A DNA stretch of 63,367 nucleotides, counting the filler, from Guillardia theta CCMP2712 (taxonomy: Eukaryota > Protista > Cryptophyta): assembly GCF_000315625.1 (NCBI RefSeq). It is 5 parts of 5 records of this genome, joined end to end, with 100 filler letters (N's around TTAATTAATTAA, not from the genome) between each part and the next. Parts side by side here need not be neighbours in the genome. Positions count along the whole stretch, not along the records: positions 1 to 25,423 come from NW_005434605.1; 4 more parts are not named here. The stretch is one strand, 5' to 3'. Below the pieces are notes generated by a model that saw only the letters and a program-made list of their open reading frames with translations, was not told the origin of the DNA and made no database searches. Both the position numbers and the translations under genes were made by a program. Positions 382 to 25,423 of this stretch are shown in pieces; positions within the stretch are counted from its first letter, which is position 1; each line of letters starts with the position of its first letter.

Positions 382-436
<55 letters not shown>

Positions 437-1924: not shown

Positions 1925-2203
1925 ATGGGTTGCGGAAGCTCTGTGCAGCAAGTGAAGTACGACCCGTGGGATGCGTACGATTGGGACTCGTTGCCGCAAG
2001 GATACAAGCAGCATTGGGAGGTTCTCGGCTTTAACCGAGCAAGTTGGAACGGAAACATTCCTGAGCCTCGAACTCTCTCCACGGCATGGTCTCAACTCTC
2101 CCCGGCTGAGAGGAACTCTGCGACCGCTCTAGGCTACAACCAGCGAATGTGGGACAATGGCGAGGAATTAACCATGCTTCCTCCCCCTCCAGCATCTCAG
2201 CAG

Positions 2204-2241
<38 letters not shown>

Positions 2242-2985
2242 TCCCCAGCAGTATCCCCAGCAGTATCCTCCGCAGCAGGTTCAGAACGCCAAGTTCTGTC
2301 AAAAGTGTGGCGCTCAGGCGAGCATGGCTCAGAACTTCTGCAACTCGTGCGGACAGCAGCTGGGCATGGCTGCTCCTATGGCGAACAATGGAGGAGGAGC
2401 TCCTCCTGGTTACGTGCCGACAGGATACATGATGCCGAATGCGAAGCCGAACCCTGGGTACAATCAGAATATGCCGAATGCTGGGATGTACAACAATCAG
2501 TACGTTCCACAGCAGCAGCAGCAGCAAATGATGGGTCGACCTGCCGGACGGATGGGGATGGGCGGGATGGGCGGGATGGGCGGGATGGGCAGGATGGCAG
2601 GAGCAGGGCTGGCAGGAGGAGCAGCAGGGTACATGCTGGGGGATGGTTCCATGTCAGGTGTGCTGGCAGAGGGAGCAGAGTTAATGCAGGACGGTTACGA
2701 GGCCGTAGCGGACGGCATGGAAGAAGTAGGAGGTGAACTTTCAAGGATATTATGCTGTCAAGTCTTAGACTGTTGCTCACAGGATACATGGGAGACGCGT
2801 TCGAGGCAGTGCAGTCTGCGGACTACGGTGGCATGATGGAGTCAGCAGGTGAGGGAGGATGAAGGAGAGTTGGTGCGTTGAGCGCTGATCTGACATGACA
2901 TGCAGGGGACGCGATGGAAGACTTCGGAGAGTCGGCAGGAGGATTCTTCGAGGATGCGGTGGGGGCGATAGGAGACTTCTTTTAA
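1925..2985 (+). CDS. Putative myristoylated/palmitoylated protein with Trp-rich repeat module, zinc ribbon and Gln/Gly/Met low-complexity region
   Basis: Starts MGCGSS. Two W..L....A/W..LG[FY]N...W units. FCQKCG...FCNSCG zinc ribbon. Two short 3' introns give ...EDAVGAIGDFF* (TAA 2983-2985). Confidence 0.8.
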
Positions 2986-3152
2986 CGTTAAATGCTCTTA
3001 AAAATGCTCTTAATCTGCTACTTAAAGTAATGACATAAATTGTGATGGTGATGGGGAATGTTTGACGATGTTGCAGCAAGAAAATGTATGAAAACAAAAA
3101 ACTGCCCGAAGAGCTAGTAGGGAGGCAGACGGCTGCCATGACTTTCTCTACG

Positions 3153-4347
3153 TCAAAAATCAAAAGCTAATGTCACAATGTACTGGAGAAGCTCTCCGTT
3201 CCCAAGAGTGTACAGGGGAGAATCGACGCCGAGTCGCTGCAGGAGAGGTCATGCGCTGTCTGCCATCCTTTCCCTTACCTTGTGCGACCCCATGCCTACA
3301 GCCAGTCGATACGCCACAAGAAAGCTGCAGGCAAGTGAGACGGCGGAGGAGGATCGGGAGCACCGGACGTGTGCGAGAAGGTATGGAGCAGGCGTGGGAT
3401 GGGCTCGGTGAGATGAATGCAGGCGCGGCGACGAATCACGTACTCGACAGCCTGAGGGAGGACGATGAGCTGAGATGATCAGCAGGACGAACGTCACCTG
3501 CACGCGGCCGATGCGGAAGCGAGCGATCAAGTAGGCGATCACAAGAGCAGCACTGTGCGTCAGTCCCGTCAGGCAGTGGACAAGCAGTTTGCCGTTCTCA
3601 GCCTGCCAAGCAAGTCACAAGTTAGCAGGAGCTGAGGGGTCGTCTCACCGCCCGCATGAAGGTGATGGCCTCTATCCACTTCCTCTGCAGATCGTCATCT
3701 TCGCTGATCTCCATGCAATAATATGAAATGTGATCGGGGAACCTGAGCAGGTGTCAATGAGGACGAGAAGATATTGATTCGTGAGATGGCAGCAAGGTGA
3801 TAGATACAGACATTGATAGACACTGATATGTGAGATGACAGCATGTCAATTGATGGACATTGATAGACGTGCTTCCTCCATGCATTCTACTTTTTCTTAC
3901 ATTGGGCGCACGATTTTCTCCAATGGAGAACGCACCAGCACAATCTGACAAGGGAGTGAGAAGGCGAGGAGAGAAGGACAAGTATGAGAGCACATGCGTG
4001 ATGCCGCAAGACATCAGTGCCGAGTACTTCCTTGCTGCAGCAAGAGGCCCCAACCACAGCTTCTCCGGTATGATCTCTTGCGCCACCCGGCGCATGTCGT
4101 ATGACCAGCCTGCGCAGGTGCACTGACTGTTGCGAAGATACTCGTAGAAGAATTCAGCATTGATCCGCTTCTCCCTCCATGAGTCCCACACGGTGGTGGC
4201 CGCCAGGTCATGGATCACTCCCTTGGTGATTACACTCCCTGCTTCGTTCTGTGTGGTGGACGGCAGCTGGGTCGGACCATGGCCTCCTGCCTGCCAGCTC
4301 TCCGACAAGATCTCGTCGTGTTCTTGCGATTGATCATAATGGGTCAT
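3153..4347 (-). CDS. Dual-specificity phosphatase-fold protein with degenerate active site (HCLTGLTHS)
   Basis: EIIPEKLWLG...GITHVLS, LLVHCLTGLTHSAALVIAYL, AVEYVIRRRACI; multi-exon; inferred C-terminus AVGMGSHKRLGVDSPLYTLGNGELLQYIVTLAFDF*. Confidence 0.8.
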
Positions 4348-4775
4348 CTACCTGCCCTCCTCAAACGTCTCTCAGACTGACTCCAGTCGTTCTGCTCACT
4401 GCTCTGAGTCCGCTATGTCATCAAAACGCAGCGGTCGATTCGCTTTCGCAAGCTAGGAAAGCAACAAGGTAAGCAATCAATAAACACTATGGTATAACCC
4501 TTGTTCTCAAGGATGCTTTGAGGATCATGATGTGTCAATATCAATTGTTCTCACCCTTGTGCCAAGCATTTCCTTCCCATCACCTTCTCCTCATAGTGTG
4601 CTGACTGCTCTTCTTTCATGTCGTGGGCACTCGTTTCCTTGGAAATATCTCGCCTTGCCCTTTGTCTCTATTTGCTATCAATTTCTCTTCCGAGCTTCGA
4701 TCTTTTGCATGATCGTTAACATGTCTTAAACTGACCTCTTCATAGAGGAAAGCGCTCTCCCCTGCTTCCTTCACC

Positions 4776-4834
4776 CCCTGCCCTGCCCTGCCCTGCCCTG
4801 CCCTGCCCTGCCCTGCCCTGCCCTGCCCTGCCCT
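4776..4834. repeat. (CCCTG)n microsatellite
   Basis: About 11 tandem CCCTG units. Confidence 0.9.
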
Positions 4835-5219
4835 ATCATGACACATCATGTCATGTTCGTCGCATCATGCCAAGTTCTCTCCATCTTCTCCTCTTCTTCG
4901 TCGCCTCCCCCATTCGTCTTCTGCATGAAGTTCCTCTCCACCAAACCCGAATACCCTTGGTGACCGTACCCCCAACCTTCCTACCCCTACCCCTAATTTT
5001 GATTGAATCGCCCCCTCATACCAATAATTGTATCAGCCCCTGGGTGAAAAGTCTCCACCGGTGGTTACGACTGGACCGACAAATTGATTTCCTGATCTGA
5101 TAGGGGTTATCCAACCACCCTTCCCCTCCCAATTCACCCCTGGAGTACCCCCACCATTTTTGAAATCGACTACCCACTTTTATCTCACCCCTACCCCCTC
5201 AAGAAGACATACAACTGGC

Positions 5220-6543
5220 ATGGATGTCTCCACTAGTAGCGCAGTTCATGCAGAGGAGCAGGGGGGAGGGGGAGCAGGGGGGGGAGAAGGGGGAGGACTG
5301 GAAAGGGCGCCAGTGGTGAAGAGGAGGAGGAGCAGGAGGAGCAGGAGTGGAAAGGGCGACAGTGGTGGAGATAGGTGTAGAAAGGAAGACAAGAGAGGGG
5401 AGGAAATGTGATTGAGGAGTGGGCACGGGAATGTTGGATAGGAAAGGCCGATGAGGAAAACTCCGTGGCGGTGTTGGCAACTGGGAGGGGCTGGGATGAC
5501 AGAGGGTTGCGAGGGCAGAAGATACGCATTATGCAGGGAGACAGGGGAAGGAGCGAATTCAAGGAATGCAAGGAGCGCTCTCAGAGGTTGCCAAGGTTGA
5601 GTTGGATTGTGACCATGTTTGCAGATGCCCCCGAGGGCTGCGGGCGCAGAGCCAGTCAGGAAGTCAGCTCGGAATGCGCAAGATGCGGCAGGACCAAGGT
5701 AGGAAGAGGATGCTTGTATCTGTAGGAAGAGACGACTTTGTTAGTAGGAAGAGAACACTTGTGTTCTTGTATTAAGGGATCTGAACCTGCTGTCAAGGTC
5801 GTTGGACGAGCGTCAGCGGGAGCGAGCAAGGCTCGCCAGGCTAGCGATGCTGGTAAGGATGAGAAGCATCTTAGCAGCAAGCACTGGCTGCAGCGATTGA
5901 GACGAGCCCTGATCCTTCTTGCATGTGACGGTGGTGAACAGGAGCGAGACAACCATGTGACGGACAACACACACATGATGAAAGTGCACAACCTTGGAGG
6001 CGATGAGTTGATCGGCAAAGGTTGTGCGAGCATGTCAAGCTTCGCATGTTGGCTCAATCTTTTCACAGGCGAACAGAAGAAGAAACGAAAGAAAATCTCC
6101 TTGTTTGAAAGAACCAAGAATAGGTTTGTGCTCTATCCTACCTCCTCGATGGCTTATGAGGGAAATTCCTCAGAACTCTGGACCAAATGATGCAGGAAGC
6201 CGAGACAGAGATGGTACAAGCATATGGGGTATGAATCTCTTCTCTAGCGCTGAGACTGATCTAGGTGACAGGCTTCATATTATGACATCGTCAGCCCCCC
6301 TCCAGGAAAGAATGAGGTTGGACAAGACCCTGACGTTGGCGCCTGCCTGACAGTTGCATGCAGGGCATCGCAAAGAAGTTATGCTCGATCTGTGGCTACA
6401 TCGCTCCTTACACTTGCCGCATCACGGGCATGCGTATGTCTTTGCGCTCACGTTGCGATGGAGGAGTGACAGACTTATAGGTTTCTGCTCGCGGCCATGC
6501 TTGCGGGTGCACGAGGAGACGAGGCTGAAGGGGCTCAAGTGAC
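5220..6543 (+). CDS. Hypothetical multi-exon protein
   Basis: Open exon-like segments (DAPEGCGRRASQEV..., EHLCSCIKGSEPAVKVVG...) bounded by GT/AG. No recognisable domain; boundaries uncertain. Confidence 0.3.
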
Positions 6544-6688
6544 GCTGCTGGTTGCTGAGGTTTAAACTTGTACATTAAATGTATTCTCTTGTACATGCGT
6601 GACCAGCCCTCGAGATCATCAACAGCTGGCGATCCCTCGACACCGTCTGAGTCGTCTCTACTCTTACCGTGAGCGCTGTCGGTGAAAT

Positions 6689-6771
6689 GATATGTGATAT
6701 GTGATATGTGATATGTGCAAATGTGATATGTGCATATGTGCATATGTGATATGTGCATATGTGCATATGTG
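6689..6771. repeat. (ATATGTG/ATATGTGC)n tandem repeat
   Basis: Directly visible 7-8 bp tandem units. Confidence 0.85.
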
Positions 6772-7388
6772 ACCTGCAGATGGTTTCCTAGATCATCGCA
6801 GAATGCGTGCTTGCACTCCATGATCTGATTCCGAAACTGATGTCCCTTGCTGATCTGAATTGAGACTAACCCGGAGCTATTGTGACCCTGACAGCTGCTC
6901 TAGTTCTTTCTGCTATCCTCCCTTCTTGTAATCTTCTTTCCTTGTTCGATCCTCCTACTTCCTCCTCCCCCCCCTCCCCCTCCTCCCCTTCCCTTAACCC
7001 CCCCGCTTCCCCTCCACCAGCCATTCGCCCCCTTCCTGCCCCTGCCCCCTCCCGTAACTGACGTTGAGCCCTTACTACCCTCTTGAGTGTGACCACCCCT
7101 CCTCATGAGCACAAATTCGCGATTTTGGAAGGGTGGGGGTAACAGGAGCTTCAACAGCTGAGCCTATCATCTAGTAGGGAGGGAGGCAACGACAGGGAGC
7201 AGAGAGGTAGAGGAGGAGAAGCAAAGGGAGGGAAGGAGGAGGAGAGAGGAGAAGAGATGTCCTAGGAGATCACAAGCTCATCCTCGCTGAACCCATCTGT
7301 TCCCAGACATTGAGCTGGCCTTGTTGCTCGGATCGTCGGGAAGTGAACAGGATCGAACTGCAGTCTGAACCCCGTCCTGCGGCAACAG

Positions 7389-10023
7389 ATGTCTTTACAT
7401 GGCTGCCAGGAGGACAGCACGATCACAGCGTTGCTGAGCTCACCGAGGTCCTTGCTGGCATGCGAGAGGCAGGGTTACACCCCCGAGCAGCTGCTGTACC
7501 GAGGAGAAGAGGAGTTCCACGATGCGCAGGCCGGTAGAGAGGTCTCCTTCCTCCGGTTCGAGCATGCCGAGCTCGGGCGCCGGAGGAGGTTGAGGGAGGT
7601 GCTGAATGAGTACGACATGGTGTGCCGGGAGGACATGCGGGATGGCGACGATGTGAGGCACCAGGGGCTGCCGTCGAGCCTAATCCAGCTGAGCGCGAGG
7701 TCGTACGAGAAGGAGTTTGAGATCCTCAAGATGAAGCTGAGGGAGCAGATCGCGGACGTGATACGTGAGGACCTGAAGAAGGAGCTCGAGAGGAGCTCGC
7801 AGCACCATCATCCTCGTCCCTCCTCTCCAGCCAACGACAAGTCCAAGGGGCCCGCAGCTGGGGAGGGCAAGTCTGCCAAGTTCAAACCTCCTCCGCTGGT
7901 AAGGAAGCAGTCGGAGAACGCAGCGAGAATGCAGAGAGAGCGAGAAGAGCAGCAGAAGCGGAACATCCAGATAAAGGAGGAGCGAAGGCTGGCAGCTCTC
8001 GAGAGGAAGAAGCACGAGCTGCAGGAGGAGAACGAGAGGAAGCGGACTGAATTCCAGCTGAGGCTGTCCTCTGCGCAGGACGCGCTAAGGGACCACCAGA
8101 TGAAGCAGGAGATGATGCTGGACGAGAAGATGAAGAAGAACGAGGTACAAAGGAAGAAGTTCGAAGAGGAGCGGAGGGAGGAGATGGAGAAGAGGAAGCA
8201 CATCCTGCAGATACGGCAGGACCGAGTGCAGCAGGCGATCAGCGAGCTGGACAGCCGAGAGGAGGTAAAGATCAGCAAGCTGAAGCAGAAGGAGGAAGAG
8301 GCCGGGAAGCGCCTGCAGGCTCTCCGGCAGAACAGAGGCGCGAGCTCGGAGCAGAGGAGGAGGGAAGCGGAGTACAAGGAGCAGCGGCGGCAGGAGATAC
8401 TGATGAGGGCGGAGTATGACAAGGAGGCGCGGAAACAGCATCTGATAGAGAGGCAACTGCAGGATGAGATACAGATTCAGCATCAGAAGGAGAAGAAGGA
8501 AAGGGAGAGGAGGCTGCACGTGGAGTTGGAGAGGCAGCGGAAGCAGGAGAGGATGGAGGCGATCGAGCGGTACCGGCGCATGGAGGAGTACAAGAGGAAG
8601 CAGCAAGCAGAGAGGATCGATGAGGAGACTCGGGCGATCCAGCAGCGGAAGTCAGACATGAAGAGACTGCACGAGTTCATCCTGGCGGAGAAGCGAGAGA
8701 GGGAGCACCTGAAGAAGCTCATGGTCGACAGCGTCAGGCACTTCGCCGTGACGCGCGTGTGGAGCGTGCCAGAGGAGGTCAGCTCGGAGATCGACTACAA
8801 CGAGATCAAGTCCGCCATCCAGGAAGAGTTCTGGAGCCAGAGGACGGGATCGCATGCGCTGAGGGACCAGGAGAGCAGAGACGTTCTCAAGCCGGCTCCT
8901 CCTTCTACAGCGCCGGGGCATGCTCGTCAGGTCTTCGTTACCCAGGAAGCAGAAGGCTCGTGGAGCAGGGGGGATACTCGGGATCGCCTCGACCATCACC
9001 CGAGACTAGTCGACCCAAGGGAGGCACAGGGAAGGTATCTTCCTCCTGCTCCTGCTCCTCCCCTTGTGCAGCAGCAGAAGCAGCGCCCCAAGTCTGCTCA
9101 CGTCAGTTCGACTCGCGTGGTCCTGTCAAATTCAGGTCACCCACTCAATGGGATCGCTCCTCTTGCTCCGCATCCAGACCACAGGGAGATCGAGGAGGGG
9201 CGAGAGCGTGAGATAAGGTGCAGTCAAGAACAACTCTCCCTCCCTCCCTGCCTCCCTCCCTGCCTCCCTCCCTGCCTCCCTCCCTGCCTCCCTGCCTCCC
9301 TGCCTCCCTGCCTCCCTGCCTCCCTGCCTCCCTCCCTTCGAAGCTCTTCCATCCCTCTACCCACCCCATGTCTCGTACCATGATCTTCTGCTTCTGACAA
9401 GCGGAAGGAGTTTCAGGCAACCGGCGAAAAAGCTTCGAAAGAAGAAGAGGATCAAGAATGGGTTCGCGCAAACTCCGCTCCTGCCTGCTCCTATCATGCA
9501 TGTGGTCGAGAGCCTTCGAAAGTGAGCAGCCTGATCAGGAGGAGGAAGCAGGAGAAGAAAGCAGGAGGAGGAAGCAGGAGAAGAAAGCAGGAGGAGGAAG
9601 CAGGAGGAGGAAGCAGGAGAAGAAAGCAGGGGGAAGGGGGCAGACAGAGGAGAGGGAGGGTGTAGAGGGGAGGGAAGATGAGGAAGGAATGAAGGGAGTT
9701 ATGCTGACGGTGTTGGATCTCAGGATTCAGAACTTGGAGCTGACACGCATGATTCAACTGGAGGAGGTTTGGTGAGATTTGGTCGATCAACCTGATGCCT
9801 CGACAGGAGCAGGAGAAGCGGCGAGAGAAGATGTACGAGATGGCTGAAGATGAAGACAGGACGGTGAGACGAGACTGTCGAGTTGGAAAGAGCTGACAGT
9901 GGGTGGCAGGAGTTGAAGAGAATCTTTGAGAAGGAGAGGAGGAGAGGAGCTCAAGAGATTATGAAGATGACTGCCGCACACGAGGAGCATCTTGCTAATT
10001 TATTAACACAACATGTGCGATGA
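7389..10023 (+). CDS. Long coiled-coil protein, CCDC177/DUF4659-like (possible cilia/cytoskeleton component)
   Basis: N-terminal LSSPRSLLACERQGYTPEQLL...RFEHAELGRRRRL resembles the CCDC177 SPRSLEAC motif. E/R/K/Q-rich coiled coil. Spliced tail RIQNLELTRMIQLEE...IMKMTAAHEEHLANLLTQHVR*. Confidence 0.75.
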
Positions 10024-10104
10024 TTAGAATTCATGTGAAAAAAGTCAAGTAAAAATTGAATAACACAAACACAACTGAGAAACGAAGAATGTTTCTTCGA
10101 CAAC

Positions 10105-10866
10105 TCAATCCCTGCCAAACAGAAGCCCTTGAAGGATGAGGAGGGGGGTGAGGAGAATGCGGAAGAGACCCTTGAACGGCAGGAAGACTAGCTTCATGAC
10201 TTGCTTCCACAGGGGCTTGCCCTGGCTCCCCTTGACCTCCGTAGGCATGTCCTTCCTCTCCACCGAGCGAGTTTGATGCTTGTCAGCCGCCGCCGCTCTC
10301 TTGGCTTCACTCTCCTGCACCAGCTCCTTGGTCACTGTGATGACGTTGTTGAGATTCCCGTCCTTGTCCTTCTCCACCTCCCACTGGTTGCTCGTCGTCC
10401 ACTCTCCATCGAGGATGAACTTGAAGTGATACTTGCCGGGGGGGATGGGGATAACGCCGTTGAACTCGTTCTCGTGCTTGCTCAGCTTGAAGTGCTCCAA
10501 CCACTTGCTCCAGGACCCAACCACAGTCACGTCCTCCACTTCATCCACGCCCTCACTGATGGAGAAGAAGACCGGCAGGTTGGCCGAGCTCAAGTCCACG
10601 TCCTCCGACACCGAGGACAGGAACTCTGCCCTCCTCACGACCACTTGGGGATCAGCCTCCTTCTCGTTCGTCTCGCTCACCACTGACTCAACATCAGACT
10701 CTGCTTTCCTCAGCTTGCTGGTGAACCCAGGTGCTCCATTCATCCTCCCCACTCCAACGTCGTTGGCCACATTCGCTGCCTCCACAGAGGCAGCTGAGCA
10801 CCACTGAATCGCGATCAGGAGGCAGAGTACGTGAGTGGAGAACTTGCTGGAGGAGAGTGGGGCCAT
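10105..10866 (-). CDS. Signal-peptide protein with AMPK-beta-type CBM48 starch/glycogen-binding domain and hydrophobic C-terminus
   Basis: Intronless 253-aa ORF. VTVVGSWSKW...IPPGKYHFKFILDGEW...DKDGNLNNVI matches CBM48. N-terminal VLCLLIAIQWCSA. Confidence 0.85.
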   Translation of the reverse strand: MAPLSSSKFSTHVLCLLIAIQWCSAASVEAANVANDVGVGRMNGAPGFTSKLRKAESDVESVVSETNEKEADPQVVVRRAEFLSSVSEDVDLSSANLPVFFSISEGVDEVEDVTVVGSWSKWLEHFKLSKHENEFNGVIPIPPGKYHFKFILDGEWTTSNQWEVEKDKDGNLNNVITVTKELVQESEAKRAAAADKHQTRSVERKDMPTEVKGSQGKPLWKQVMKLVFLPFKGLFRILLTPLLILQGLLFGRD

Positions 10867-12202
10867 GTCGTTATGCTCAAATCTTGTGCAGCACTTGCCC
10901 TCCTACAGGGAAGGGGGAAGCCAGCTCAGGTAGATTGAGGCTAAAACAGCTCAAAAGATCTCCAGTTGCGGCTCTGAAAAAAAGCACCAGTAAGAGGCAA
11001 GACGTAGAGAAGCATTGCTCCTCTCTCCTCCTCATCCTCATCTAATCTAAATATTCGCAAAGCACAAGATGCTCCTATCTCCCCACCCTCATAAGTGGTC
11101 TACTCTTTCGGCGATGCCTCCTCATCATCCGCTCTTCTGCTCCATAATATGATCGCCGATGGTGTAGTGGCAAGAGGGTTCGACTAGTTACTGCTCGGCT
11201 TATCATCTAAAGTCACGATTGGCCTATCGTTTCCCTCTCACGATCACATCTCTTCATATCTTCCTCCTAAATTCAAAATGACGTACCTGAGCTCTAACAC
11301 ATCATCTCTATCCTGCCTTCTTGCATAGAACCAAAACAGCCATCGGCGAACGAGAATGCTATGTTGACCTTCTCCATCCAACACCATTCACTTTCATCAT
11401 CATCTTCCTCCTTAGCATCGCTATTCTGCCATCGGCGTCTCCCCTCATTCTCTTCATCTGCCATGATCTATGGCCACCTCCTCCTGCCAACGGTTTCATC
11501 AGCCGCAACTCCCGCCATAGCGTCTCCTCATCTATCTCGCTGGCCACCTCTACCCACCCCAGCTACCAAACTGTACCCCCACCTCCAACTTCTTCACCCC
11601 CTACCCCCAGAAAAACTCAAGACCCCCCTGACTTCGCAACAAAGTACCCCCTATTTGACGTTATGGACGATTGCTAACCCTGACAATATCACCCTTTACC
11701 CCCCTGATTGCCAGGTCAGACCCCCCTACCCTCAATGTCTCTACACCCCGAATACCCCACCCCTTCACATCTCGCAACCAACAAAATATTGATGACCTAC
11801 CATCCAAACACCCACCCCCTCTACTGGATTCACTAATGAATACCCCACCCACCAATAGCTATGAACATGAAATATACCCCATCTTTCTCACAAAAGGAGA
11901 CTCAAATACCCGGTCCGGAGAGACGTACCCCATCTGGTGTCGCAACTACAAAAGTACCCCACCACCTTGTTACACATGACCCCACCCTACCAGTCAAATT
12001 GTCGTTGTGACCCTCCCCCGAGATTCAAAAAAATGTCCCGCCAAACTCAAGGCTTATCTGGTCTGCCATCATCCGTTCCCTCCCTCAGTCCAAGATGCCG
12101 TCGGTACCAAGATGCCGGGCCCCGGGCCCCGGGAGCTCATACCGCACAAATTCAACTGCTCCCCGCACGCACCTGTCCCCGCACTGTCCCCGCTGCTCCC
12201 CG

Positions 12203-14705
12203 ATGCCGCCTATGATGGCGCAGGAGCTGGAGAGGTTGTCGAGCGACATGGTGAAGGCAAGGAAGGAAGAGAAGCTGCTCACGGAGCAGGGGAAGCAGCA
12301 GACCCTCACTTTCCTCGTCCAGGGACAGGAGGAGGCGCGCGTGCTCGCCCTGCGCGCCATCGTAGCTGCTCGCGCGTTCGATGGGAAGTTGGAAGGTGCA
12401 GGGAGCCTTAAAACAGTGTCGGAACATGGAGAGGGGGGAGAAGGAGAAGCAGCAGCAGCAGCAGCGGGAGAAGCTGAAGGTGACGAGGACACGATTGTGT
12501 TGAGAGACCTGAAGGTCGAGCTGCTCGAACACGCCATACACTATATGTACACGGGTAGCTTCGAGGTGGATGAAGGGAACGTGCATGATATGCTGAAACT
12601 TGGGAAGAGGATGAGCCTGCCCGGGGTCATCAACATATGCTCCTCCTTCCTCTCAGAACGCTGCAGCAGCTCGTCAGTGTGCAAGGCCCTTGCAAGCGCG
12701 GAGGCGAGCGAAGCAGCGGAGCTGAAGGAATTCTGTCTCAACTTCATGGACAGGAGCGCGAAGGACGTGCTGGGCGACCCCTCGTTCGTTGAGCTGCCGA
12801 AGGAAGTCCTGCAGGAGGTGCTGAGGAGGGACTCCCTCGAGGTGGAGGAGGTGGACTTGTTCGCAGCGGTGGTGAGGTGGGGGAAAAGGCAGGCCGAGAT
12901 TGTTGAGCAGGAGGCAAGGCGGATGGCGGAGGCTGCGGCAGAGGCAGCTCCTTCAGGGGAGGGCAACAACGAGGGGAATGAAGGAGGAGGAGGAGGAGGA
13001 GGAGGAGGAGGAGGAGGAGGAGGAGGGAAACGGGACAACCGTCCCTTCCTCGAGATCGCCCTCAGCGGGGTAATCGACCATGTTCGTTTCCCCCTCATAT
13101 CCCCTGCTGCCCTCCGGGACGTGGTCCAGCCTTCTCTGACGGTGGAGCACGAGGGGGAGAAGCGATGCGTCGCGGAGAGGTACGTGCTGGAAGGCTACCA
13201 GCACCATGCTCTCACCAAGATCGGGCAGCCCAGCAACGTGGAGGAGGAGAGGCGGCGGCCGAGGAAGAATCAGAGCTCGTCGCAGGCTGAGGTGAACAGG
13301 GAGGAAGAGGAGGAGGCAGGGAGGGTGGAAGAGGCGAGACGCCGGGCAGGCCGCACGGTGAGGTGGCTGGAGAATCTCCCACGGCAGGCGGCGCGGGTGA
13401 GCATGAGGGGGATGGGGCTGGGTTATGCGGATGCGGTGGTGACGGCAGAGCACGTGAAGAGGGGAGGGAGGAGCCTTGAGGAGATGGACCTGAAGAACAA
13501 CGACTTGGACCTGTCCTCCATGCAGGTGCTTCTCCCAGCGCTGGGAGGATGCAGCGGGCTCAAGGGGCTGGCTCTCGGGGACAACCCCATCTTCACTGTG
13601 AGGGCTCGACTGTCGAGGAGGTGAAGTACTGACGGCAGCGAGCAGAATATGGGGGAGAGAGATGTAGAGGTTGTACAAATGCTACTTGCCAACCTCAAGA
13701 CCGTCAAGCTTGAGAAGCTCGGGTTAGGGAGCACAGGGATGGACGATAAGAGCTTGAGGGGTCTGGTGGAAGTCCTTCCTAGCTTCAGGAGCCTCAAGGT
13801 CCATATCACTTCCTGCTCCCTCCTGTGGCAATACATAGTGACATGCTCCTCGTCCTCGTCCTCGTCCTCATCTTCCTCTTCTTCCTCGTCCTCGTCCTCG
13901 TCCTCATCTTCCTCTTCTTCCTCGTCCTCCTCCTCCTCCTCATCATCATCATCCGCTTTCTCCTCCTCCCACCTTCAATCCCTCCCTCCCCATTTCCTTT
14001 CTCCACCCTCGACCCTCTCCTCTTTGTTCCTATTCTCGTCTTTGTTCCCCTCCTCTTCTCCTTCCTCCTTTCCCTCTCTCTGCCTCCCTTCCATTTTCTG
14101 CCTCCTCTCTTCAGGTGTTGGGTCTCAGCGGAAATCGTCTGACCAGCGAAGGGGTCGAGTTTCTTCTTACACGCCTCCAGGTGACGTGGGGGAGGAGGAG
14201 GATGGAAATGATTCTACTGGCTGCAAGCACAAATTGAACTTGTTGCTGCAGAAACTGCGGGAGGAAGGAGCTTGTTTGAGTTTGCACACTCTTATCCTCC
14301 ATGACAACTCTATATCAGGTTGAAACCTCACCCTCTCCCCCCCACCCACCCATCCTCTCCTCCTCTTCCTCCCCTCCCCTCCCCTCCCCTCCTCTCCTCT
14401 CCTCTCCTTTCCCCTCCCCTCCTCTCCTCTCTCTCTCCTCTCCTCTCCTCTCCTTCCTGCTGCTCTACTCCAATCTCTACCACTTCATATTCTTCTCAGT
14501 ACTTATCCCCTATCGCAATCCTTGCCTTCCTTCCCCTTCCATCCACCTTAGCTCCTCGCTCCTCTCCTCTCCTCTTGCTTCTCAGTCTGCGAACTCCTTC
14601 CCCATATTTCCTTCTCCTGATCTCCTTTCCTCAGATGCGGAAGTTTCGAAGCTGCAATCTCTTTCACCAAAGGGAATGATCGTGCAGTTGAAATCCGATA
14701 GGTGA
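12203..14705 (+). CDS. BTB/POZ-BACK protein with C-terminal RNI-like leucine-rich repeats
   Basis: BTB (LALRAIVAAR...LLEHAIHYMYTG), BACK (FVELPKEVLQEVLRRDSLEVEEVDLFAAVVRW...HVRFPLI), LRRs (LEEMDLKNNDL, LKGLALGDNPI, LHTLILHDNSI). Last exon ends VQLKSDR*. The start could be 12095. Confidence 0.85.
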
Positions 14706-14989
14706 CAAGCAGTGCAATCAGGGTTTGTTTGTAGATATCCGAGGTGATATAAAGTCCGACCTCCACGCAGCATCGAGAGAAAATAAGGAGAAGGCAGGAG
14801 GAGAAGGGAAGTGAAAGTTTCGAAAGCTTGTAATCAGAAAGAACAGCTCAACTATGCCAGTCGAAACTAGAATGTATCTCTACAACTGTCAACTAAATAT
14901 GTACAAATGGTACAAAATCAATACGCACTTCCTCCCCCTCCCCTCCTTCCAGCCACCACCTCCTCGCTACCTCCGTCCCACTCCCTTGC

Positions 14990-17900
14990 TAAGAAGCTCT
15001 GTAAATCTCTGGCATGAAAACGCGTCGGGGCTCTTGAAAGGCGGCAAGGGAGGGAAGAGGAGGAGCAATTTCAACTACCACACCCTCCGTCCTCCTCCCG
15101 TTCATGATCCTACTCGCCTGTTGCTATCAAAGAAGGTCAGAATCGAGCAAGAGAAGTCAGAGAGGAGGAGGNNNNNNNNNNNNNNNNNNNNNNNNNNNNN
15201 NNNNNNNNNNNNNNNNNNNNNNNNNNNNNNNNNNNNNNNNNNNNNNNNNNNNNNNNNNNNNNNNNNNNNNNACATTGAGAATCTTGCTTCCTCCTGCCTG
15301 CTCCTCCTCTGTTCCTCCTGCCTGCTCCTCCTCTCCTCCTCCTGCCTGCTCCTCCCCTCCTCCTCCTGCCTGCTCCTCCCCTCCTCCTCCTGCCTGCTCC
15401 TCCTCTCCTCCTCCCCTGGATCCCCGACGCTGCTCTTCGAAAGAGAAGTCCGCGGTGCGTTGGAGACGGCTGGAGGAGCGAACATGAGAGGAGAAGGCGA
15501 GCTGGACTGGAAGACGGATCGCCAGTAGGAGTCAGGAGGGTTGTAGTAGTGGTGAGGGAGGTCGAGCCAGAATGTTTTGAAGTTTCCTTTGCCACGGATT
15601 GAAACCATCCCGCGGCAGACCTGACGGGAAAGTGAAAGGAGGAAGCAAACAACAGAACCAGTGAGATGGAGGGAGGGAGGGAGGGAGGGGGGAGGGAGGG
15701 AGGGAGGGAGGGAGGGAGGGAGGGAGGGAGGGAGGGAGGGAGGGAGGGAGGGAGGGAGCTGAGATAGATAGGCGGGAGGAGGCAAGGGGGAGCGAGGGGT
15801 TTTTCATCTCCTACAATGAATGACGCGAACTCGTCGTTGGCCTCGGACAAGAGCTTCGTCCTCATCTCTGCCGACAACTGCTCCCCAACGTCAACGCAGC
15901 CCAGCTGCATAGCAGCAGGGGACCCACCTGAATCCTGTTGGGTCCCGAGGTGGCCGCGAGCTGGGAAGCAACGGTGATGGTTGAGCCGAAGAGACAGTAG
16001 CGCTGCGTTTGCTTCCTGTTGCCGACGACGCTCGCGACTACCGACCCCACATGGCAACCGATCCTCAGCATGAGCGTCTCCTGTGCCCGTCCCTGGTGGA
16101 GGAGGTGGTGAGGAAGGTGCAGGTGCAGAAGAGGATGATGGGTAGGAGGAGGGAGGGATGGAGGGAGGGATGGAGGGAAGAAGGAAGAGGAGAGGGAGAG
16201 GAGGAGAGAGGAAGAGCAGCGGGAGCGAGGGAACGATGAAGGGAGGAATGGACCTCTTCATCAAGGAGTATTTCGCGGGTTGACTGCAAGAGGGCGACGG
16301 CAAACTGGGCGACAGAGGCAGCGTTGCTGTGCTGCTCGTCGTAGAGGCCGGATGCGACCTAAGGGAAGAAGAGTCAGAGGAGGAAAGGAGGAAGAAGTTC
16401 GAACGAGGAGCGTGCAAAGAGACAGGATGTCGTGGTAGGGAGAGAGAACCATGGAGGGCTGCGAGGAAAAGGAGGACGAGCAGGGAGAGGGAAAGCTGGA
16501 TCAAGGGGAGGCAGCTTACCATGCAGGTCCCCCCGTTTGTGTGGATCCGAAAGACGCCATGGAGCTTGGAGAGGTTGTCTATCGTCTCGTAGAGTTTGCG
16601 CATGAGCTCCCGAAACTTTCAGCTGAGGGTCAGCTGGTAGGCAGGTGGGAAGGAGGGAGGGGACAGAACCTTCTGGCGAGGAAGCTCCCTGGTCAGCCTC
16701 TCCATGTTCACGACGTCGGCGAAGAGGACGGAGACGTTGGAGAACCTCTCAGGGTCGACCTTGATGCCATCCAAGACCATCTTGGCGATCTGAGCCGGAG
16801 GAGCGTCAGAGGGCGGGGAGGGGGGAAAGGGAGGGAGGGTGGGAAGGGAGGGAGGGGAGGAAAGACGAGACGAGAAGGAGGAAGTGTGGGAGGAGGACGG
16901 AGAGCCTCTCAATTCCTCCCTGTCACCTTAGGAGGGAAGGAGGGAGAAGGGTTGATGCTCTGATCGGACGAGTGGCCGCTGAAGGGAAAGCTCATCGAGT
17001 AAACTTTGTCCATCTGGAAACACAGCAGCATGGCGAGGAAGAGTCAGCACCCCAAAGACTTTCATCTCCTCGTCCGCGTCCTCGTCCTCGTCCTCGTCCT
17101 CGTCCACCTACTGCTGCGCCCCAGCCCCCCTTCAAATGAGAACCTCCTCCTCGTCCTCCTTCCCCTTCTGCACAAGATTCCAGTCCTCTCCCCTATCTAC
17201 CCAACCCCTCCCTCTGCGCTGTCCCAACTCTTCTCTTCCTCGTTGATTCTCCGCCCTCCTCACCATTCGGCTCATGAAATCTGGGTCGGACGTCAGGCTG
17301 TTGATCGCGGAGACGATGGAGGTGAAGGCTGGACGTCTCTGCGGGTCTTGACACCAGCAGTCCTGAATGAGATTGATCATCTCCTGAGGGACATTCGAAT
17401 AGTCCAGCTCCGGTCTCAGCACTCCGGTCTTCACACCCTGCATGACCTGCGTTGTGCGGTGAGGAGAACGAAGGAGGGGAAGGAGCGAAGGAGGGAGGGG
17501 AAGGGAGTAGTGAGGGAGGGAGAAGGTGAGGGAGGAGAAGCGGGAATGAAGAGGAAGGCAAGTGAATGTGATCAAGAGACAGACCTGGTAGATGTTGAGG
17601 TTGTTGTAGATGTTGTCGTTGAGAGGGTGGAAGATCTCGTACATGGTAATGGCGAAAGCGTAGACATCAGTGGCTGTGGACGCCCCTCGGCCATCCAACA
17701 GCTCAGGAGCATTCCAGAATATAGTCCCCACTCGCTCTCCCTCCTTCGATCGGGCAGAAGTCATCCCAAAGTCGGAAATCTGCAGCACAAGCTTCAGCCT
17801 CCCCCTTCATTGCTGTCCCTCTCCTCCCTTCACCTTCGGGGTCAGTTTGGCATCCACCAGGACGTTGGCAGCTTTCAGATCCTTGTGGATCAGGGGAGGG

Positions 17901-20018
17901 TTGGCCAGGTGGACATACTGCATGCCAGCCGCAATGCCTGCCAACAACGATATGAGAACAGGCGGAGCGGCGGCAGCAGAGGCAGCAAGGAGGACAGAGG
18001 GCAAGTGAGATATGGCAGGGCAGCGATCGGAGATCGGAGAGGACCAATGCAAGACATGTCACCTGAGATCAAATCCATCTGAATGTCGAACGTCATGGCA
18101 AACCGATTGTTCAACATGTCACGAATGCTGCCGTACTCGAAGTACTGCATCAGCAAGAACTCCTTGCCGTACTCGAAGCACGCTCCCATGATCGGGCACA
18201 AGTTGGGATGCCTCATCGAGATCATGACCTTGACCTCGGTCATCAGTTGCGACCGGATGCTCTTGTTCAGGCCCTGGCCCCGACCGATGAGCAGCTCCAT
18301 GAGCTGCGGCTGGTCCTGGTCCTTCATCCCTGTCCCCGAGTTCGACTTCGTCAGGTCGACCTCTCCGGAAGTTCCCCTAGCACTGATCCCGCTCGAGGTC
18401 GGCGAGGAGTGGCTCACCCTGTTAGCAAGGTTCGGCTGCCAGGCGACAGAGTTCATGGCTGACTTGAGCGGCATCTGGTTGAGCTTCAACGCTTCCGACG
18501 GCGAAACCAGCCGCTTACATGCCACCACTTGACTTCGAAAGTGAACCTTGAGAACAACCCCGAACGATCCTTGCCCGAGCACCTCAGGCTTCTCCGGAAA
18601 GCTTACTTCATCCCAGCTGACCTTCCACAAGTTCTCTTTGCGACTCTTGATGTATCCCACCAGGAAGAACACCCCGATGCAAACGAGCGCAAACCCTCCG
18701 AGCGAGATCAGCACAACAGTCCCCACGTTCCTCGCAGCCCACGAGGCCCCAACATCCTGCGAGTTGCACGGGCACAAGCTCTCGACCAAACTCATGTTGG
18801 GCGCCGGCCATGATGGGAGGTCACTGCACAAAAACAGCTGCGGGAGTGATTCGCACTGCTTCCCCTGCAGCAGAGCCAACGCGTTCGTCAGAGTCAACGT
18901 GCTTCCACTCGAGTGATTGCGAACAACCCTCGTGATCGGAGCCTTCGGGAGGTCTGCGTTCGGGTTCAACTTGACGATCATCTCGTTATCCCAACACGCG
19001 ACTTTCCCTTGCAAAACCTTATCCAGGAGCGAGGCGGTCATGTTCAGCTGAACACCGATGTCCAGGTGCGCTACGACAACTACAGGCGCTGCATAGATAG
19101 GGAGCAGCATAAATCTCGTGCGCTGCTCCAGGGAAAGCGACTGGGGCGCCACGTCCACCCCCGCAAAGTCGATGCTTGCACCCAACTCAGAGAAATTGAG
19201 CAAATCCCCTCCGTTGTAGTTCACCACCGTGCTCGGCTGCAAGTTGATGGTGTAGTAGTTGTTGAGCTTCGTGAAGAGAGGAGAGAGGAGAGTAGAGCCA
19301 TAGGCCACAATCTTGGTGGTGGTCTTTGAAGTCACAGGGAATGACATGTTGGCTACCTTCTTACCATTGCACGACAGCTCTGAGATCGATTCCAACACAT
19401 AGCTTCTGATCTGAGCCGGCATCTCAACATACCAGGCATCGTTTGCAATCTTCCTGGCTTCGCTGGAGGTAACAATCCAGATCATGTACTCCTGCAACAC
19501 CTTTACCCTCAGGCACTCCTCCACGGTAGCCACTTGGAAGTTGTAAGGGAGCAGCAGGTAGGCCATCCCAACCAAGGGCCATGCACCAGGGAATAGGGCA
19601 TGAGCAAAATCTGGACACCTGGACCTCGCAAACCCAGGACACCTCTCGTTGATAATCAGCTCAGGTTGCAACGAGGCATTCACGCTGTGCATGGTGGGGA
19701 GCATGAATCCACCGTCCAGCCCTTGTACCGCTACGATCTGCAAGTTCCTGTTGTAAGATCCATCAATATATGTCGGGTAGCCTGCATAGCCTATGGAGAA
19801 GAGATTATCCCTCAACCCCTCCAAGAGGGCATTGGTCGTTTCCTGCAGCAGGAGAACAAGTCAGCAGCGAGCGGGCATGGCGCCAACGAGGAAACAACCT
19901 TGCGGACAAACAGGTCGCACACGGGGAGCGTCCCTGACTGTCCTACAACAGGGAGAATGGAAATCTGCAGGAGCAGGAGCAGGAGCAGGAGCAGCATCCA
20001 GCCCCGCGCCTTCATCAT
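14990..20018 (-). CDS. Single-pass receptor: signal peptide, PstS-like ectodomain, TM, TKL protein kinase, class III guanylyl-cyclase-like domain
   Basis: Signal [26 protein letters not shown]. PstS motifs (YGSTL, DFAGVD, GKVACWDNEMIVKLNPNADLP, RNHSSGST, AWPLVGMAYLLL). TM VGTVVLISLGGFALVCIGVFFLVGYI. Kinase GQGSFG/VACK/HKDLKAAN/DFG/APE. Cyclase VSVLFADVV...RIGCHVGSVVASVVG...RYCLFG...RGKGNFKTFWL. The 3' end crosses an N gap and is approximate. Confidence 0.9.
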
Positions 20019-23306: not shown

Positions 23307-25423
23307 ATGCTGAGGATAGGAGGGCGGGGAGCGAGAGGTTTGCGAAGAATGCAGAGGAGAGTGTCAGAAGAAGTGAGAGGAGGAAGTCAAACTGATGGAA
23401 TGAACTGATGTGAGAACATCACGACGACAAGATTGAAGGAGAAGATCGCAGCGGACGGAGAGGACGGGGCTTACAGTGAGTTGTTGGGAACTGTTTGTAC
23501 GCCTGGGTACAAACATCTCGAAAGAAAGAGCATGCAGACGGTATGAAAGAAGATCTTGGTAGTAAGAGTGAGAAAACGAGTTAGTTCGGGGAAGAGAGGC
23601 CTGCACTCGATCTGGTGAGGGACTCTGCTCTTGCATACAGGGTCTGCATAATGTCGAGCTCCCGAAGGAGGCAAAGAGGACATACAGGTCAAACCAACAA
23701 ATTCCACAAGGAGAAAGCAGAAGAGCAGGACGATAATCATGAAAACAAAGAAGCATCTCATCCTCCTGTACACGAGCGGCTCGAGGAGAACAGGCTAGTT
23801 GTTGGGTCACCAGCCAAGGCATCAACTTGGGAGAAGCGATCAAGGTCTGTGCGTTTCATTGACTGCCATCTTGCTCGTCCTTGCTGCCAGTCGTCGGACC
23901 TGACATGCTCTGTCTCAGCTCGAATAAGCGACAAACTCCGACGTGGAAGAGGAAGTTCAAGGTCGGGGATGAGCTGGAGAGGAACAAGAGGATAGAGCTT
24001 CACGCCAAGGTCACCTCCCTCTCGGGGAAGCTGAGGAAGGCGTTCCTAGCCTCAGACGAGAGTGGAGATTCCAAGTGAGTCGAGAGGAGGAGGCGAAGGA
24101 AGAGTGAGGGACGAGGAGAGAGGGCGGGCGGAAGTGTTGATATGTAGGCATAGAGGAGGAGCAAGGGCAGGGGCAGGGGCAGGGGCAGGAGCAGGAGATC
24201 TAAACACATTGTGCAGGCTGCAGCCAGACGAAGTGAAGGAGATGCTGCATAAGTGGGGAAAGGATCTCAAGGACGACGAGATCAGCCTGCTGGAGAATTT
24301 CCTGTGGAAGGCGGACAGGAACGGAGACGGGGTGCTGGAATATGATGAGTTTGTGAACCGCCTGGCGGAGTTTGAGCAGTCGCTGCAGTTCGACCGAGCC
24401 AACCAGGTGTCGCATGAGGCAATGACGGCGCTGGTGAACTCGAAACTTTGGAAGGAGATCGAGAGGAACAGGAGGGAGATCATCGCGGAGATGGCGAGGA
24501 GTGCGACGTCGGGGATCCGGTCCATGTCCAAGGGGGAGGTGTGGGAGGCGCTGGGGAGGGTGAAGGGGATGAAGTTCACGGACGAGATCAAGGAGTGGTT
24601 CATAGCAGCCGCCAACACGTGGGACGAGGAGAGGTTCAATGCTGGCTCGCTTTTCGATCGGTCCTCAGAAGCAGGAGGCTTCGACATCGCAAACTTCAAC
24701 TTCATGAGGGATACGGTAAAGGACCTGCGGCCAACGCACATGAGCCCTGAGAAGCTGGCTGAGTACAAGGCAAAGGCGCTGGCGCGGATGGAGAGAATGA
24801 GGCCAAAGATTGAGAATCTCATCTCAAAGCTCACGTTGCAGGTCGGAAACTCCCTCCACCGCGCCTTCCGCGCGCTCGATGACAACAAGACGGGCGTTCT
24901 GAACGCGGAGAAGATCTACAATGGCTTCAAGAGACATGGGGTGAAGATCAGCGAGGAGGAGGCGGGGGAGATCGTACAGGCGTGCGACATCAATGGGGAC
25001 GGGCACATCGAGCTGATCGACTTCCAGAACTTGTTCACGGATGAAGTGAAGGTGAGAGGAGGAAGCGGAGGGGCAGCAGCGGGAGTGCTGGGGGAGGAGC
25101 AAAAGCAGAAAAAGGCAAGAGATGGTAAAGGAGCAAGGGAGGAAGTTAGAGGAGGAATCAGAAGGGAGGAAGCAGAATGTAACTTTCCACCTCAACTTTA
25201 TGCCCTCAGGCTACAGTGGACGTGGATAGAAATCGCTCGCTCGTCGTCCGATCGGCCGCGATCCCGTCGCTCGTGCTGCAGCAGATGCGGGAGAACGGAG
25301 GGAAGACAGGCAGGTGCTGTGTGAACGCTTCCATCGCTGACCCGCGATGGAGCAGAGAGGAAGTGGTTTTCTCAGTTCCACCAGGGAGACTGGCAAGTTG
25401 CCTCCTTCCTACCCCCCTCGGCT
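23307..25423 (+). CDS. Multi-EF-hand calcium-binding protein (3' truncated at contig end; start approximate)
   Basis: EF loops DRNGDGVLEYDEF, DDNKTGVLNAEKI and DINGDGHIELIDF, plus AFLASDESGD. Confidence 0.8.

What the first reader, a model, noticed from the sequence alone, without database searches (positions are those of the whole stretch)
15560..18630. Intact kinase with a dead guanylyl cyclase: inverse of animal receptor GCs
Seen: the kinase keeps all catalytic motifs (GQGSFG, VACK, alphaC Glu, HKDLKAAN, DFG, APE). The class III cyclase keeps the first metal Asp (FADVV), but ETIGDAYM reads HTNGGTCM (specificity Glu and second metal Asp lost) and CLFGDTVNTASRM reads CLFGSTITVASQL (catalytic Asn and Arg lost). 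Established: animal NPR/GUCY2 receptors pair a pseudokinase with an active cyclase, and both Asp residues plus Asn/Arg are required for catalysis. Both half-sites are broken, so it could not complement in a heterodimer either. Inference: output is phosphorylation, with the pseudocyclase acting as a dimeriser, nucleotide sensor or dominant-negative modulator of active paralogs.
Basis: partly seen in the sequence, partly recalled or inferred. Interest (0 to 1): 0.75.

Follow-up and report, generated by a model that had tools for sequence, protein, structure and literature searches.

The report
Receptor kinase with a dead cyclase domain
A cryptophyte alga expresses a cell-surface receptor whose protein kinase keeps every catalytic residue while its attached cyclase domain has lost most of its own; it is a divergent member of a large, little-studied protist family in which both enzymes are normally intact.

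Summary
A 12-exon gene lies on the minus strand (window 15272-20018). All 11 introns are confirmed by spliced RNA contigs from three studies.

It encodes, in order:
- a signal peptide;
- a circularly permuted PstS-like ectodomain;
- one TM helix;
- a TKL-type kinase with every catalytic motif;
- a short Pro/Ser linker;
- a class III cyclase domain that keeps only the first metal Asp. It reads HTNGGTCM for ETIGDAYM and FGSTITVASQL for FGDTVNTASRM.

The context changes the reading. The genome, a cryptophyte and probably Guillardia theta, holds about 11 further kinase-cyclase genes with both domains intact. More than 3000 relatives exist, mainly in diatoms and cryptophytes.

This gene and its sister on contig C54 sit on a long branch. 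Kinase and cyclase are equally diverged from the paralogs (35% identity each). Yet the kinase keeps 15 of 15 signature residues and the cyclase 3 of 8 (Fisher p=0.002).

So this is a derived pseudocyclase on a probably active receptor kinase, not a decaying gene and not a separate 'inverse' lineage. No activity was measured. No orthologue sequence covering the cyclase exons could be found, so dN/dS was not computed. I rate it a new variant of a known kind, of moderate interest.

The parts
19899..20018 (-). Exon 1: start codon at 20018 and a signal peptide with a poly-Leu core.
   Evidence: Sequence. The splice 19899|19842 is confirmed by RNA contigs in X1, X2 and X4. The contigs stop inside the CTG repeat, so the ATG itself is inferred.
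18727..19842 (-). Ectodomain (residues 41-412): a circularly permuted PstS / PBP_like_2 domain, C-terminal half first and N-terminal half second, followed by a Cys-rich juxtamembrane stretch.
   Evidence: Pfam PBP_like_2 4.4e-9. NCBIfam TIGR00975 PstS 1.2e-24. Against solved PstS chains, ectodomain residues 177-325 match PstS 44-193 and residues 86-150 match PstS 289-346. The order is swapped relative to the non-permuted relative P0230. ESM Atlas features score 0.96 to PBP_like_2 clusters.
18649..18726 (-). Single transmembrane helix (residues 413-438).
   Evidence: A hydrophobic stretch in the translation, followed by basic residues. Read from the sequence, not from a predictor.
17264..18594 (-). 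Protein kinase domain across exons 2-5 (exon 2 to 18063, exon 3 17834-17937, exon 4 17585-17779, exon 5 17264-17446). It carries GQGSFG, VACK, alphaC Glu, HKDLKAAN, DFG and APE, and an insert of about 85 residues, Ser-rich, between beta3 and alphaC.
   Evidence: Pfam PK_Tyr_Ser-Thr on each exon. Motif table against paralogs. All splice sites confirmed.
16927..17013 (-). Exon 6: a 29-residue Pro/Ser-rich linker. The helical LLxDLFP segment that precedes the cyclase in intact paralogs is replaced here.
   Evidence: Splices 17264|17013 and 16927|16789 are confirmed. Comparison with paralogs.
15815..16789 (-). Degenerate class III cyclase-homology domain, exons 7-11 (16670-16789, 16520-16615, 16254-16358, 15928-16092, 15815-15877), continuing into exon 12. 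Asp848 is kept. His888, Gly892, Ser967, Thr970 and Gln974 replace Glu, Asp, Asp, Asn and Arg.
   Evidence: Pfam Guanylate_cyc 2.6e-12 on exon 10. Solved AC5 C2 and sGC alpha are the best matches. Alignments. All five introns, including the 50-nt one at 15878-15927, are confirmed.
15272..15620 (-). Exon 12: the last cyclase strand (IRGKGNFKTFWL), then a Ser/Pro tail and a Glu/Arg/Gln-rich repeat of 24 nt x 5.2 copies that runs into the assembly gap. The stop codon is not determined.
   Evidence: Splice 15815|15620 confirmed. Tandem repeat at 15289-15414. RNA contigs break inside the repeat.
15172..15271 (.). A 100-N scaffold gap that hides the 3' end of the coding sequence.
   Evidence: Sequence. 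One RNA contig bridges 15125 to 15272 with letters that are not known.

Best explanation
This is an expressed single-pass receptor of a cryptophyte alga. A PstS-like (phosphate-binding-protein-like) ectodomain sits outside the cell. Inside are a TKL-type Ser/Thr kinase with all catalytic residues and a class III cyclase-homology domain that can no longer make a cyclic nucleotide.

The cyclase lacks the second metal-binding Asp, the base-recognising Glu, and the transition-state Asn and Arg. It therefore cannot supply either half of a dimeric active site, alone or with a partner.

The gene descends from a family of receptor kinase-guanylate cyclases in which both enzymes are intact. In this lineage the cyclase became a pseudoenzyme. 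The change predates the duplication that gave the sister gene on contig C54.

The signal most likely leaves the receptor as phosphorylation. The dead cyclase domain, whose fold is an obligate dimer, is probably kept as a dimerising or regulatory module for the kinase.

Shown here: gene structure, expression, motif states, family context, and equal overall divergence of the two domains. Inferred: kinase activity, lack of cyclase activity, the role of the dead domain, and the ligand.
For: - All 11 introns are confirmed as one in-frame isoform in RNA contigs from three studies, with no base differences in the cyclase exons.
- Each of the 11 G. theta paralogs whose kinase was recovered shows G-loop, VAVK, alphaC Glu, H[GK]DLK..N, DFG and APE. 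Ten of them, plus two further cyclase loci where no kinase was recovered, also carry FSDIV, ETIGDAYM and FGDTVNTASRMES. The eleventh, C12, lacks both metal Asp. This gene alone shows FADVV, HTNGGTCM and FGSTITVASQL.
- Kinase and cyclase are each 35% identical to the paralogs, which are 58% and 62% identical among themselves. The kinase keeps 15/15 signature positions and the cyclase 3/8 (Fisher p=0.0017). Catalysis is conserved in one domain only, while the other domain as a whole has not diverged faster.
- The sister paralog C54 (100% bootstrap) also has a degenerate cyclase (VGSAVSVASELE). The dead state is therefore old and has been kept in frame in two genes.
- A Hanusia phi orthologue is 86% identical over the ectodomain and kinase N-lobe.
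- The only PF00211 match in the gene is exon 10, so there are no hidden alternative exons.
Against: - No enzyme activity was measured for either domain.
- No orthologue sequence covering the cyclase exons was found, so dN/dS was not computed.
- Intact motifs do not prove kinase activity. The kinase carries a long insert and lies on a long branch.
- The linker has lost the helical segment that couples and dimerises cyclase domains in relatives, which weakens the dimeriser idea.
- The 3' end lies in an assembly gap.
- The raw-read RNA run gave almost no coverage.
Confidence: 0.55

Rival explanations
1. Heterodimer modulator. The dead cyclase domain pairs with the cyclase domain of an intact or half-site paralog, for example C305 (fully intact) or C12 (both metal Asp lost, Asn/Arg kept). 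It then silences or regulates that partner's cGMP output, so the receptor acts mainly as a dominant-negative or regulatory subunit.
For: - Class III cyclases are obligate dimers (established knowledge).
- The four genes that share the permuted PstS ectodomain show graded site loss: C305 DEDR-T-DNR, C12 EEAQ-T-DNR, this gene DHGR-C-STQ, and C54 degenerate. This resembles alpha/beta specialisation.
- Exon 10 resembles sGC alpha, which also lacks Asn/Arg.
Against: - This gene lacks the second metal Asp, so it cannot supply the half-site that C12 needs.
- Its cyclase domain is only 28-37% identical to the paralogs.
- It has a 2-residue insertion in the hairpin before RYCLFG, a segment that, as I recall, lies at the dimer contact. 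This may disfavour cross-pairing.
- No co-expression or interaction data exist.
Confidence: 0.2
2. Relic domain. The cyclase-homology domain has no function and is simply carried along by a useful receptor kinase, or the whole gene is drifting.
For: Five of eight key residues are lost. The gene lies on a very long branch. The coupling helix in the linker is lost.
Against: - About 200 codons over six exons stay open and correctly spliced.
- The domain is no more diverged than the kinase.
- The fold-defining hydrophobic pattern is retained.
- The sister gene C54 keeps the domain as well.
Confidence: 0.1
3. Double pseudoenzyme. The kinase is also inactive despite its motifs, and the protein is a scaffold or ligand sink.
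For: The sister C54 has HRN in place of HRD. The kinase is only 35% identical to family members.
Against: 15 of 15 catalytic signature positions are kept against a 35% background. That is hard to explain without selection for catalysis.
Confidence: 0.08
4. Residual or altered catalysis. The domain still turns over a nucleotide by a non-canonical mechanism.
For: The first metal Asp, the beta4 Arg and the RYC motif are kept. His at the Glu position also occurs in the second domain of tandem cyclases in this genome.
Against: Loss of the second metal Asp together with the Asn and Arg abolishes activity in studied class III cyclases (established knowledge, not tested here).
Confidence: 0.05

Closest known systems
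Protist (diatom and cryptophyte) receptor-type guanylate cyclases with a kinase domain. UniRef names them 'Guanylate cyclase', for example in Seminavis robusta. Transcriptome papers call them receptor-type guanylate cyclases (PMC7296067).
   Same: Same architecture: a periplasmic-binding-protein-like ectodomain, one TM helix, a TKL-type kinase and a class III cyclase. Homology is clear: its intact paralog C305 finds 3083 proteins at E<=1e-20, and this gene has about 11 kinase-cyclase paralogs in its own genome.
   Different: In 101 of about 120 top family members both domains are intact: kinase signature GGGKEHGDKNDFGAPE with cyclase signature DEDR[CTSG]DNR. Here the cyclase reads DHGR-C-STQ. 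The coupling helix is lost and the gene sits on a long branch with one sister.
Animal receptor guanylyl cyclases (NPR-A/B, GC-C, retinal GCs).
   Same: Same order of parts: ligand-binding ectodomain of a PBP fold, one TM helix, kinase-like domain, cyclase domain. One domain is a pseudoenzyme that presumably serves the other.
   Different: The dead and live domains are swapped. Animal kinase-homology domains lack the HRD Asp (PMC12493192) and their cyclase is active. The ectodomain here is PstS-type (PBP type II, permuted), not ANF_receptor. The linker is Pro/Ser-rich, not a coiled coil. The family kinase matches CTR1, TAK1 and RIPK1 best, not NPR-A.
Degenerate half-sites of heterodimeric class III cyclases (sGC alpha, tmAC C1).
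   Same: Exon 10 reads like sGC alpha: FGNNVTLANKF there and FGSTITVASQL here, with Asn and Arg lost in both.
   Different: Those subunits keep both metal Asp and still build one active site with their partner. This domain has also lost the second Asp, so neither half-site is usable.
Bacterial PstS phosphate-binding proteins.
   Same: The ectodomain aligns to PstS with the GST, DFAG-x-D and R-x3-SGS-T ligand motifs largely kept.
   Different: It is circularly permuted, tethered to a membrane receptor, and has Asp at the position of the ligand Ser38 in the alignment. Ligand binding was not tested.

Membership tests
Protist receptor kinase-guanylate cyclase family | TKL-type kinase domain followed by a class III cyclase-homology domain in one polypeptide. 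| tested here: met
   Pfam PK_Tyr_Ser-Thr and Guanylate_cyc lie on exons of one spliced transcript. tblastn of the spliced model covers both domains of paralogs in single HSPs.
Protist receptor kinase-guanylate cyclase family | Extracellular solute-binding-protein-like domain and a single TM helix. | tested here: met
   PBP_like_2 / PstS matches. The hydrophobic helix at residues 413-438 is read from the sequence.
Protist receptor kinase-guanylate cyclase family | Catalytically competent cyclase (two metal Asp, Glu/Cys or Thr specificity pair, Asn, Arg). | tested here: not met
   Signature DHGR-C-STQ against the family's DEDR-[CTSG]-DNR. It is therefore a homologue by descent but not a guanylate cyclase by function.
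Active eukaryotic protein kinase | G-loop GxGxxG, beta3 Lys, alphaC Glu, catalytic-loop Asp and Asn, DFG, APE. | tested here: met
   All are present. The arginine of HRD is Lys here and Gly in the paralogs.
Active eukaryotic protein kinase | Phosphotransfer activity. | not testable with these tools
   Needs an autophosphorylation assay.
Animal receptor guanylyl cyclase (RGC group) | Pseudokinase domain that lacks the catalytic Asp. | tested here: not met
   HKDLKAAN keeps the Asp. The definition is taken from PMC12493192.
Animal receptor guanylyl cyclase (RGC group) | ANF_receptor (PBP type I) ectodomain and a coiled-coil dimerisation linker. | tested here: not met
   The ectodomain is PstS-type. 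The linker exon 6 is Pro/Ser-rich.
PstS phosphate-binding protein | Canonical N-to-C domain order and the eight phosphate ligands. | tested here: inconclusive
   The order is permuted. Most ligand motifs align, but Ser38 aligns with Asp. The AF2 model was unusable (pLDDT 31.8).

The most novel reading that the evidence does not exclude
The receptor is a cell-surface sensor for phosphate or a related oxyanion. The permuted PstS ectodomain would read the external ligand and the intact kinase would report it by phosphorylation, with the dead cyclase domain holding the dimer together. The wider family would then be dual-output receptors (phosphorylation plus cGMP) that marine algae use to sense dissolved nutrients. 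Within one genome, paralogs would have been specialised by killing one output or the other: this gene lost the cyclase, C12 keeps a half-site cyclase, and C54 lost both.
Probability: 0.15. Interest if true: 0.8.

Novelty: new variant of a known kind. Interest (0 to 1): 0.5.

Why it matters
Receptor kinase-cyclases are abundant in diatoms and cryptophytes, with thousands of genes, yet they are known almost only from annotation and differential expression. This case shows three things from sequence alone:

- The family's kinase looks catalytically competent, unlike the animal pseudokinase domain.
- Individual paralogs have switched off one output.
- A dead cyclase domain can be kept for a long time next to a live kinase.

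It gives a natural 'kinase-only' control for testing what the two outputs do. The PstS-like ectodomain suggests a testable link to nutrient sensing in algae.

Tried and rejected
- AF2 of the ectodomain with a 7-row alignment gave pLDDT 31.8. The model was unusable, so no fold search was run.
- The look-up of encoding contigs for the Hanusia orthologue P0001 found nothing.
- P0001 is a partly unspliced transcript that stops in the intron after exon 5, so it says nothing about the cyclase.
- The representative search with exon 10 found no protein sharing the degenerate motif. The best hit, at 56% identity, is an ordinary GC.
- The word search on the exon 8 open frame found nothing.
- Exon 8 alone has no significant match to any solved chain.
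- Full-text searches for 'pseudocyclase', and for kinase homology domain + guanylyl cyclase + mimivirus, found nothing.
- The raw-read RNA run X18 gave almost no coverage of the gene.
- A 23-nt intron after exon 10 was considered and rejected. RNA shows a 50-nt intron (15878-15927).
- Tandem duplication with the neighbouring kinase-cyclase on the same contig was rejected, because that gene groups with C36 in the tree.
It was not sent to any database, structure or complex tool. Those searches were done exon by exon, so folding and dimer prediction of the cyclase domain were left out.
Full report
**What is there.** The window is part of an 87.1 Mb, 669-contig genome. The closest database protein comes from the cryptophyte Hanusia phi, at 86% identity. 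I therefore take the organism to be a cryptophyte. It is probably Guillardia theta, but that name is my inference from genome size and this hit.

The finding lies in a minus-strand gene with 12 exons:
- exon 1, 20018-19899
- exon 2, 19842-18063
- exon 3, 17937-17834
- exon 4, 17779-17585
- exon 5, 17446-17264
- exon 6, 17013-16927
- exon 7, 16789-16670
- exon 8, 16615-16520
- exon 9, 16358-16254
- exon 10, 16092-15928
- exon 11, 15877-15815
- exon 12, 15620 onward

I derived these exons from the sequence. All 11 junctions then appeared, with GT..AG ends on the gene's strand, in one spliced contig of about 3.2 kb in each of two runs (X1, X2) and across three shorter contigs in a third (X4), from three different studies. 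The only base differences listed lie outside the exons, at 14821 and 17076. So there is one in-frame isoform, and nothing restores the lost motifs. Exon 12 runs through a 24-nt repeat into a 100-N gap, so the stop codon is unknown.

**Checking the observation.** Pfam finds PBP_like_2 and PK_Tyr_Ser-Thr on exon 2, the kinase on exons 3-5, and Guanylate_cyc on exon 10 at E=2.6e-12. The spliced translation was built only in a local script. It carries:
- GQGSFG
- VACK
- an alphaC Glu in LMTEVKVM
- HKDLKAAN
- DFG
- APE
- the subdomain XI Arg

In the cyclase it reads LFADVV, HTNGGTCM and RYCLFGSTITVASQL. A MAFFT alignment with seven G. theta cyclase domains and one animal-type GC has no gaps at these motifs. 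It places His888, Gly892, Ser967, Thr970 and Gln974 on the Glu, second metal Asp, FGD Asp, Asn and Arg.

**Family context.** The genome has 81 exon-level matches to PF00211. A tblastn search of the spliced model against fetched loci identified 11 further loci in which a kinase lies upstream of a cyclase on one strand.

In all 11 the kinase reads G-x-G-x-x-G, VAVK, alphaC Glu, H-[GK]-D-L-K-x-x-N, DFG and APE. In ten of them the cyclase reads FSDIV, ETIGDAYM and FGDTVNTASRMES. The eleventh, C12, lacks both metal Asp.

A search with the intact paralog C305 found 3083 proteins at E<=1e-20. They come mostly from diatoms, plus Hanusia. They carry Pfam kinase and Guanylate_cyc domains with varied solute-binding ectodomains: PF12974, PF01094, PF13416 and PF12849. 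Of about 120 top hits, 101 carry the complete kinase signature together with intact cyclase signatures.

The C305 kinase matches active TKL kinases best among solved structures: CTR1 at 1.7e-40, then EGFR, CSK, TAK1 and RIPK1. NPR-A is not among the 60 listed. The family norm is therefore a receptor whose two enzymes both look competent. Diatom papers mention 'receptor-type guanylate cyclases' only as differentially expressed genes (PMC7296067).

**What is special about this gene.** In a maximum-likelihood tree of kinase plus cyclase columns, this gene and a gene on contig C54 are sisters at 100% bootstrap. They sit on a very long branch, and their placement beyond that is uncertain.

C54 has the same exon pattern. 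Its kinase reads HRN in place of HRD. Its cyclase is also degenerate (FRCSAGVHAGEVV, YCAVGSAVSVASELE). Two large gaps hide its metal-Asp exons. The shared Ser at the FGD position suggests that the cyclase died before the two genes split.

The two domains of this gene give an internal control:
- The kinase is 35.2% identical to 11 paralogs, which are 57.6% identical among themselves.
- The cyclase is 35.4% identical to the same paralogs, which are 62.4% identical among themselves.
- The kinase keeps 15 of 15 signature positions. The cyclase keeps 3 of 8 (Fisher p=0.0017).

So catalysis is under selection in the kinase only. The cyclase fold as a whole has not diverged faster than the kinase. 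With in-frame splicing over six exons, this argues against simple decay.

**Mechanism.** Class III cyclase sites form at a dimer interface. One subunit supplies two metal Asp and the other supplies Asn, Arg and the base-recognising residues (established knowledge). This domain lacks one Asp and also lacks Asn, Arg and Glu. Neither a homodimer nor a heterodimer with an intact partner would gain a working site from it.

Phosphorylation is the likely output. Why the dead domain is kept is inference. A dimerising or regulatory module for the kinase is my preferred reading. A dominant-negative or regulatory partner of paralogs is the main rival.

Two paralogs add to the picture. C12 has lost both metal Asp but keeps Asn and Arg. 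A multi-TM cyclase on contig C148 has the opposite pattern. Complementary half-sites therefore do exist in this genome.

One point weakens the dimeriser idea. The segment before the cyclase reads SINPSPSFPPKIAKMVLDG here and NALLYDLFPKHIAEALQEG in C305. The helical part that couples cyclase domains in relatives has been replaced by prolines.

**Ectodomain.** NCBIfam gives PstS at 1.2e-24. Against solved PstS chains, ectodomain residues 177-325 align with PstS 44-193, and residues 86-150 align with PstS 289-346. The non-permuted relative P0230 shows the same swap. The domain is therefore circularly permuted.

From their partial sequences, C12, C305 and C54 appear to share the permutation. Most phosphate-ligand motifs align, but the ligand Ser38 position holds Asp here. 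An AF2 model failed at pLDDT 31.8, so fold and ligand remain open.

**What could not be done.** No orthologue sequence covering the cyclase exons was found, so dN/dS was not computed. The joined protein was not sent to any search, folding or complex tool. Those steps were done exon by exon or left out. No activity was measured.

**Verdict.** The 'inverse of animal receptor GCs' label describes the domain states well, but not the origin. This is a derived pseudocyclase member of a large protist receptor kinase-cyclase family. I rate it a new variant of a known kind, of moderate interest.

Noticed in passing
window 18727-19842 (-): The PstS-like ectodomain is circularly permuted: the C-terminal half of PstS comes before the N-terminal half. 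From their partial sequences, paralogs C12, C305 and C54 appear to share this. The ligand Ser38 position aligns with Asp.
   Followed up: partly
L045 (G000:C54:483500-492500, minus strand): The sister paralog has HRN in place of the kinase HRD and also a degenerate cyclase (VGSAVSVASELE). It may be a double pseudoenzyme. Two large N gaps hide part of the gene.
   Followed up: partly
L043 (G000:C12:946500-953500, plus strand): This kinase-cyclase paralog has lost both metal Asp (FFAEIYGY, ETIGATYM) but keeps FGDTVNTASRMES. It is a beta/C2-like half-site that would need a partner.
   Followed up: partly
L057 (G000:C148:77500-85500, minus strand): A multi-TM protein with a cyclase domain that keeps both metal Asp (QMDIV, ETIGDCY) but has lost Asn/Arg (FGSNFQIASK). 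It is the complementary alpha/C1-like half-site.
   Followed up: no
L048 (G000:C69:56000-65000), about 13 kb beyond this gene on the same strand: A second kinase-cyclase gene with an intact cyclase (DEDR-T-DNR). It groups with the C36 gene, so it is not a recent tandem copy of this one.
   Followed up: partly
L020-L030 (several contigs): Many genes carry two cyclase domains in tandem with complementary signatures (DDDRQEEE-type and xHDKCDNR-type), like the C1/C2 domains of membrane adenylyl cyclases. His at the 'Glu' position is normal in their second domain.
   Followed up: no
window 18235-18516 (-): An insert of about 85 residues, Ser-rich, lies between the kinase beta3 Lys and the alphaC Glu. 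It is also present, and longer, in paralogs such as C305.
   Followed up: no
window 10108-10866 (-), 12095-14320 (+), 24062-25321 (+): Neighbouring open frames carry an AMPK1_CBM domain, BTB/BACK domains followed by leucine-rich-repeat-like sequence, and EF-hands. No link to the receptor is evident.
   Followed up: no
window 17066-17109: A GACGAG-type repeat in intron 5 collects very deep RNA coverage and many loose read ends from elsewhere in the transcriptome. This is a mapping artefact, not expression of the intron.
   Followed up: no
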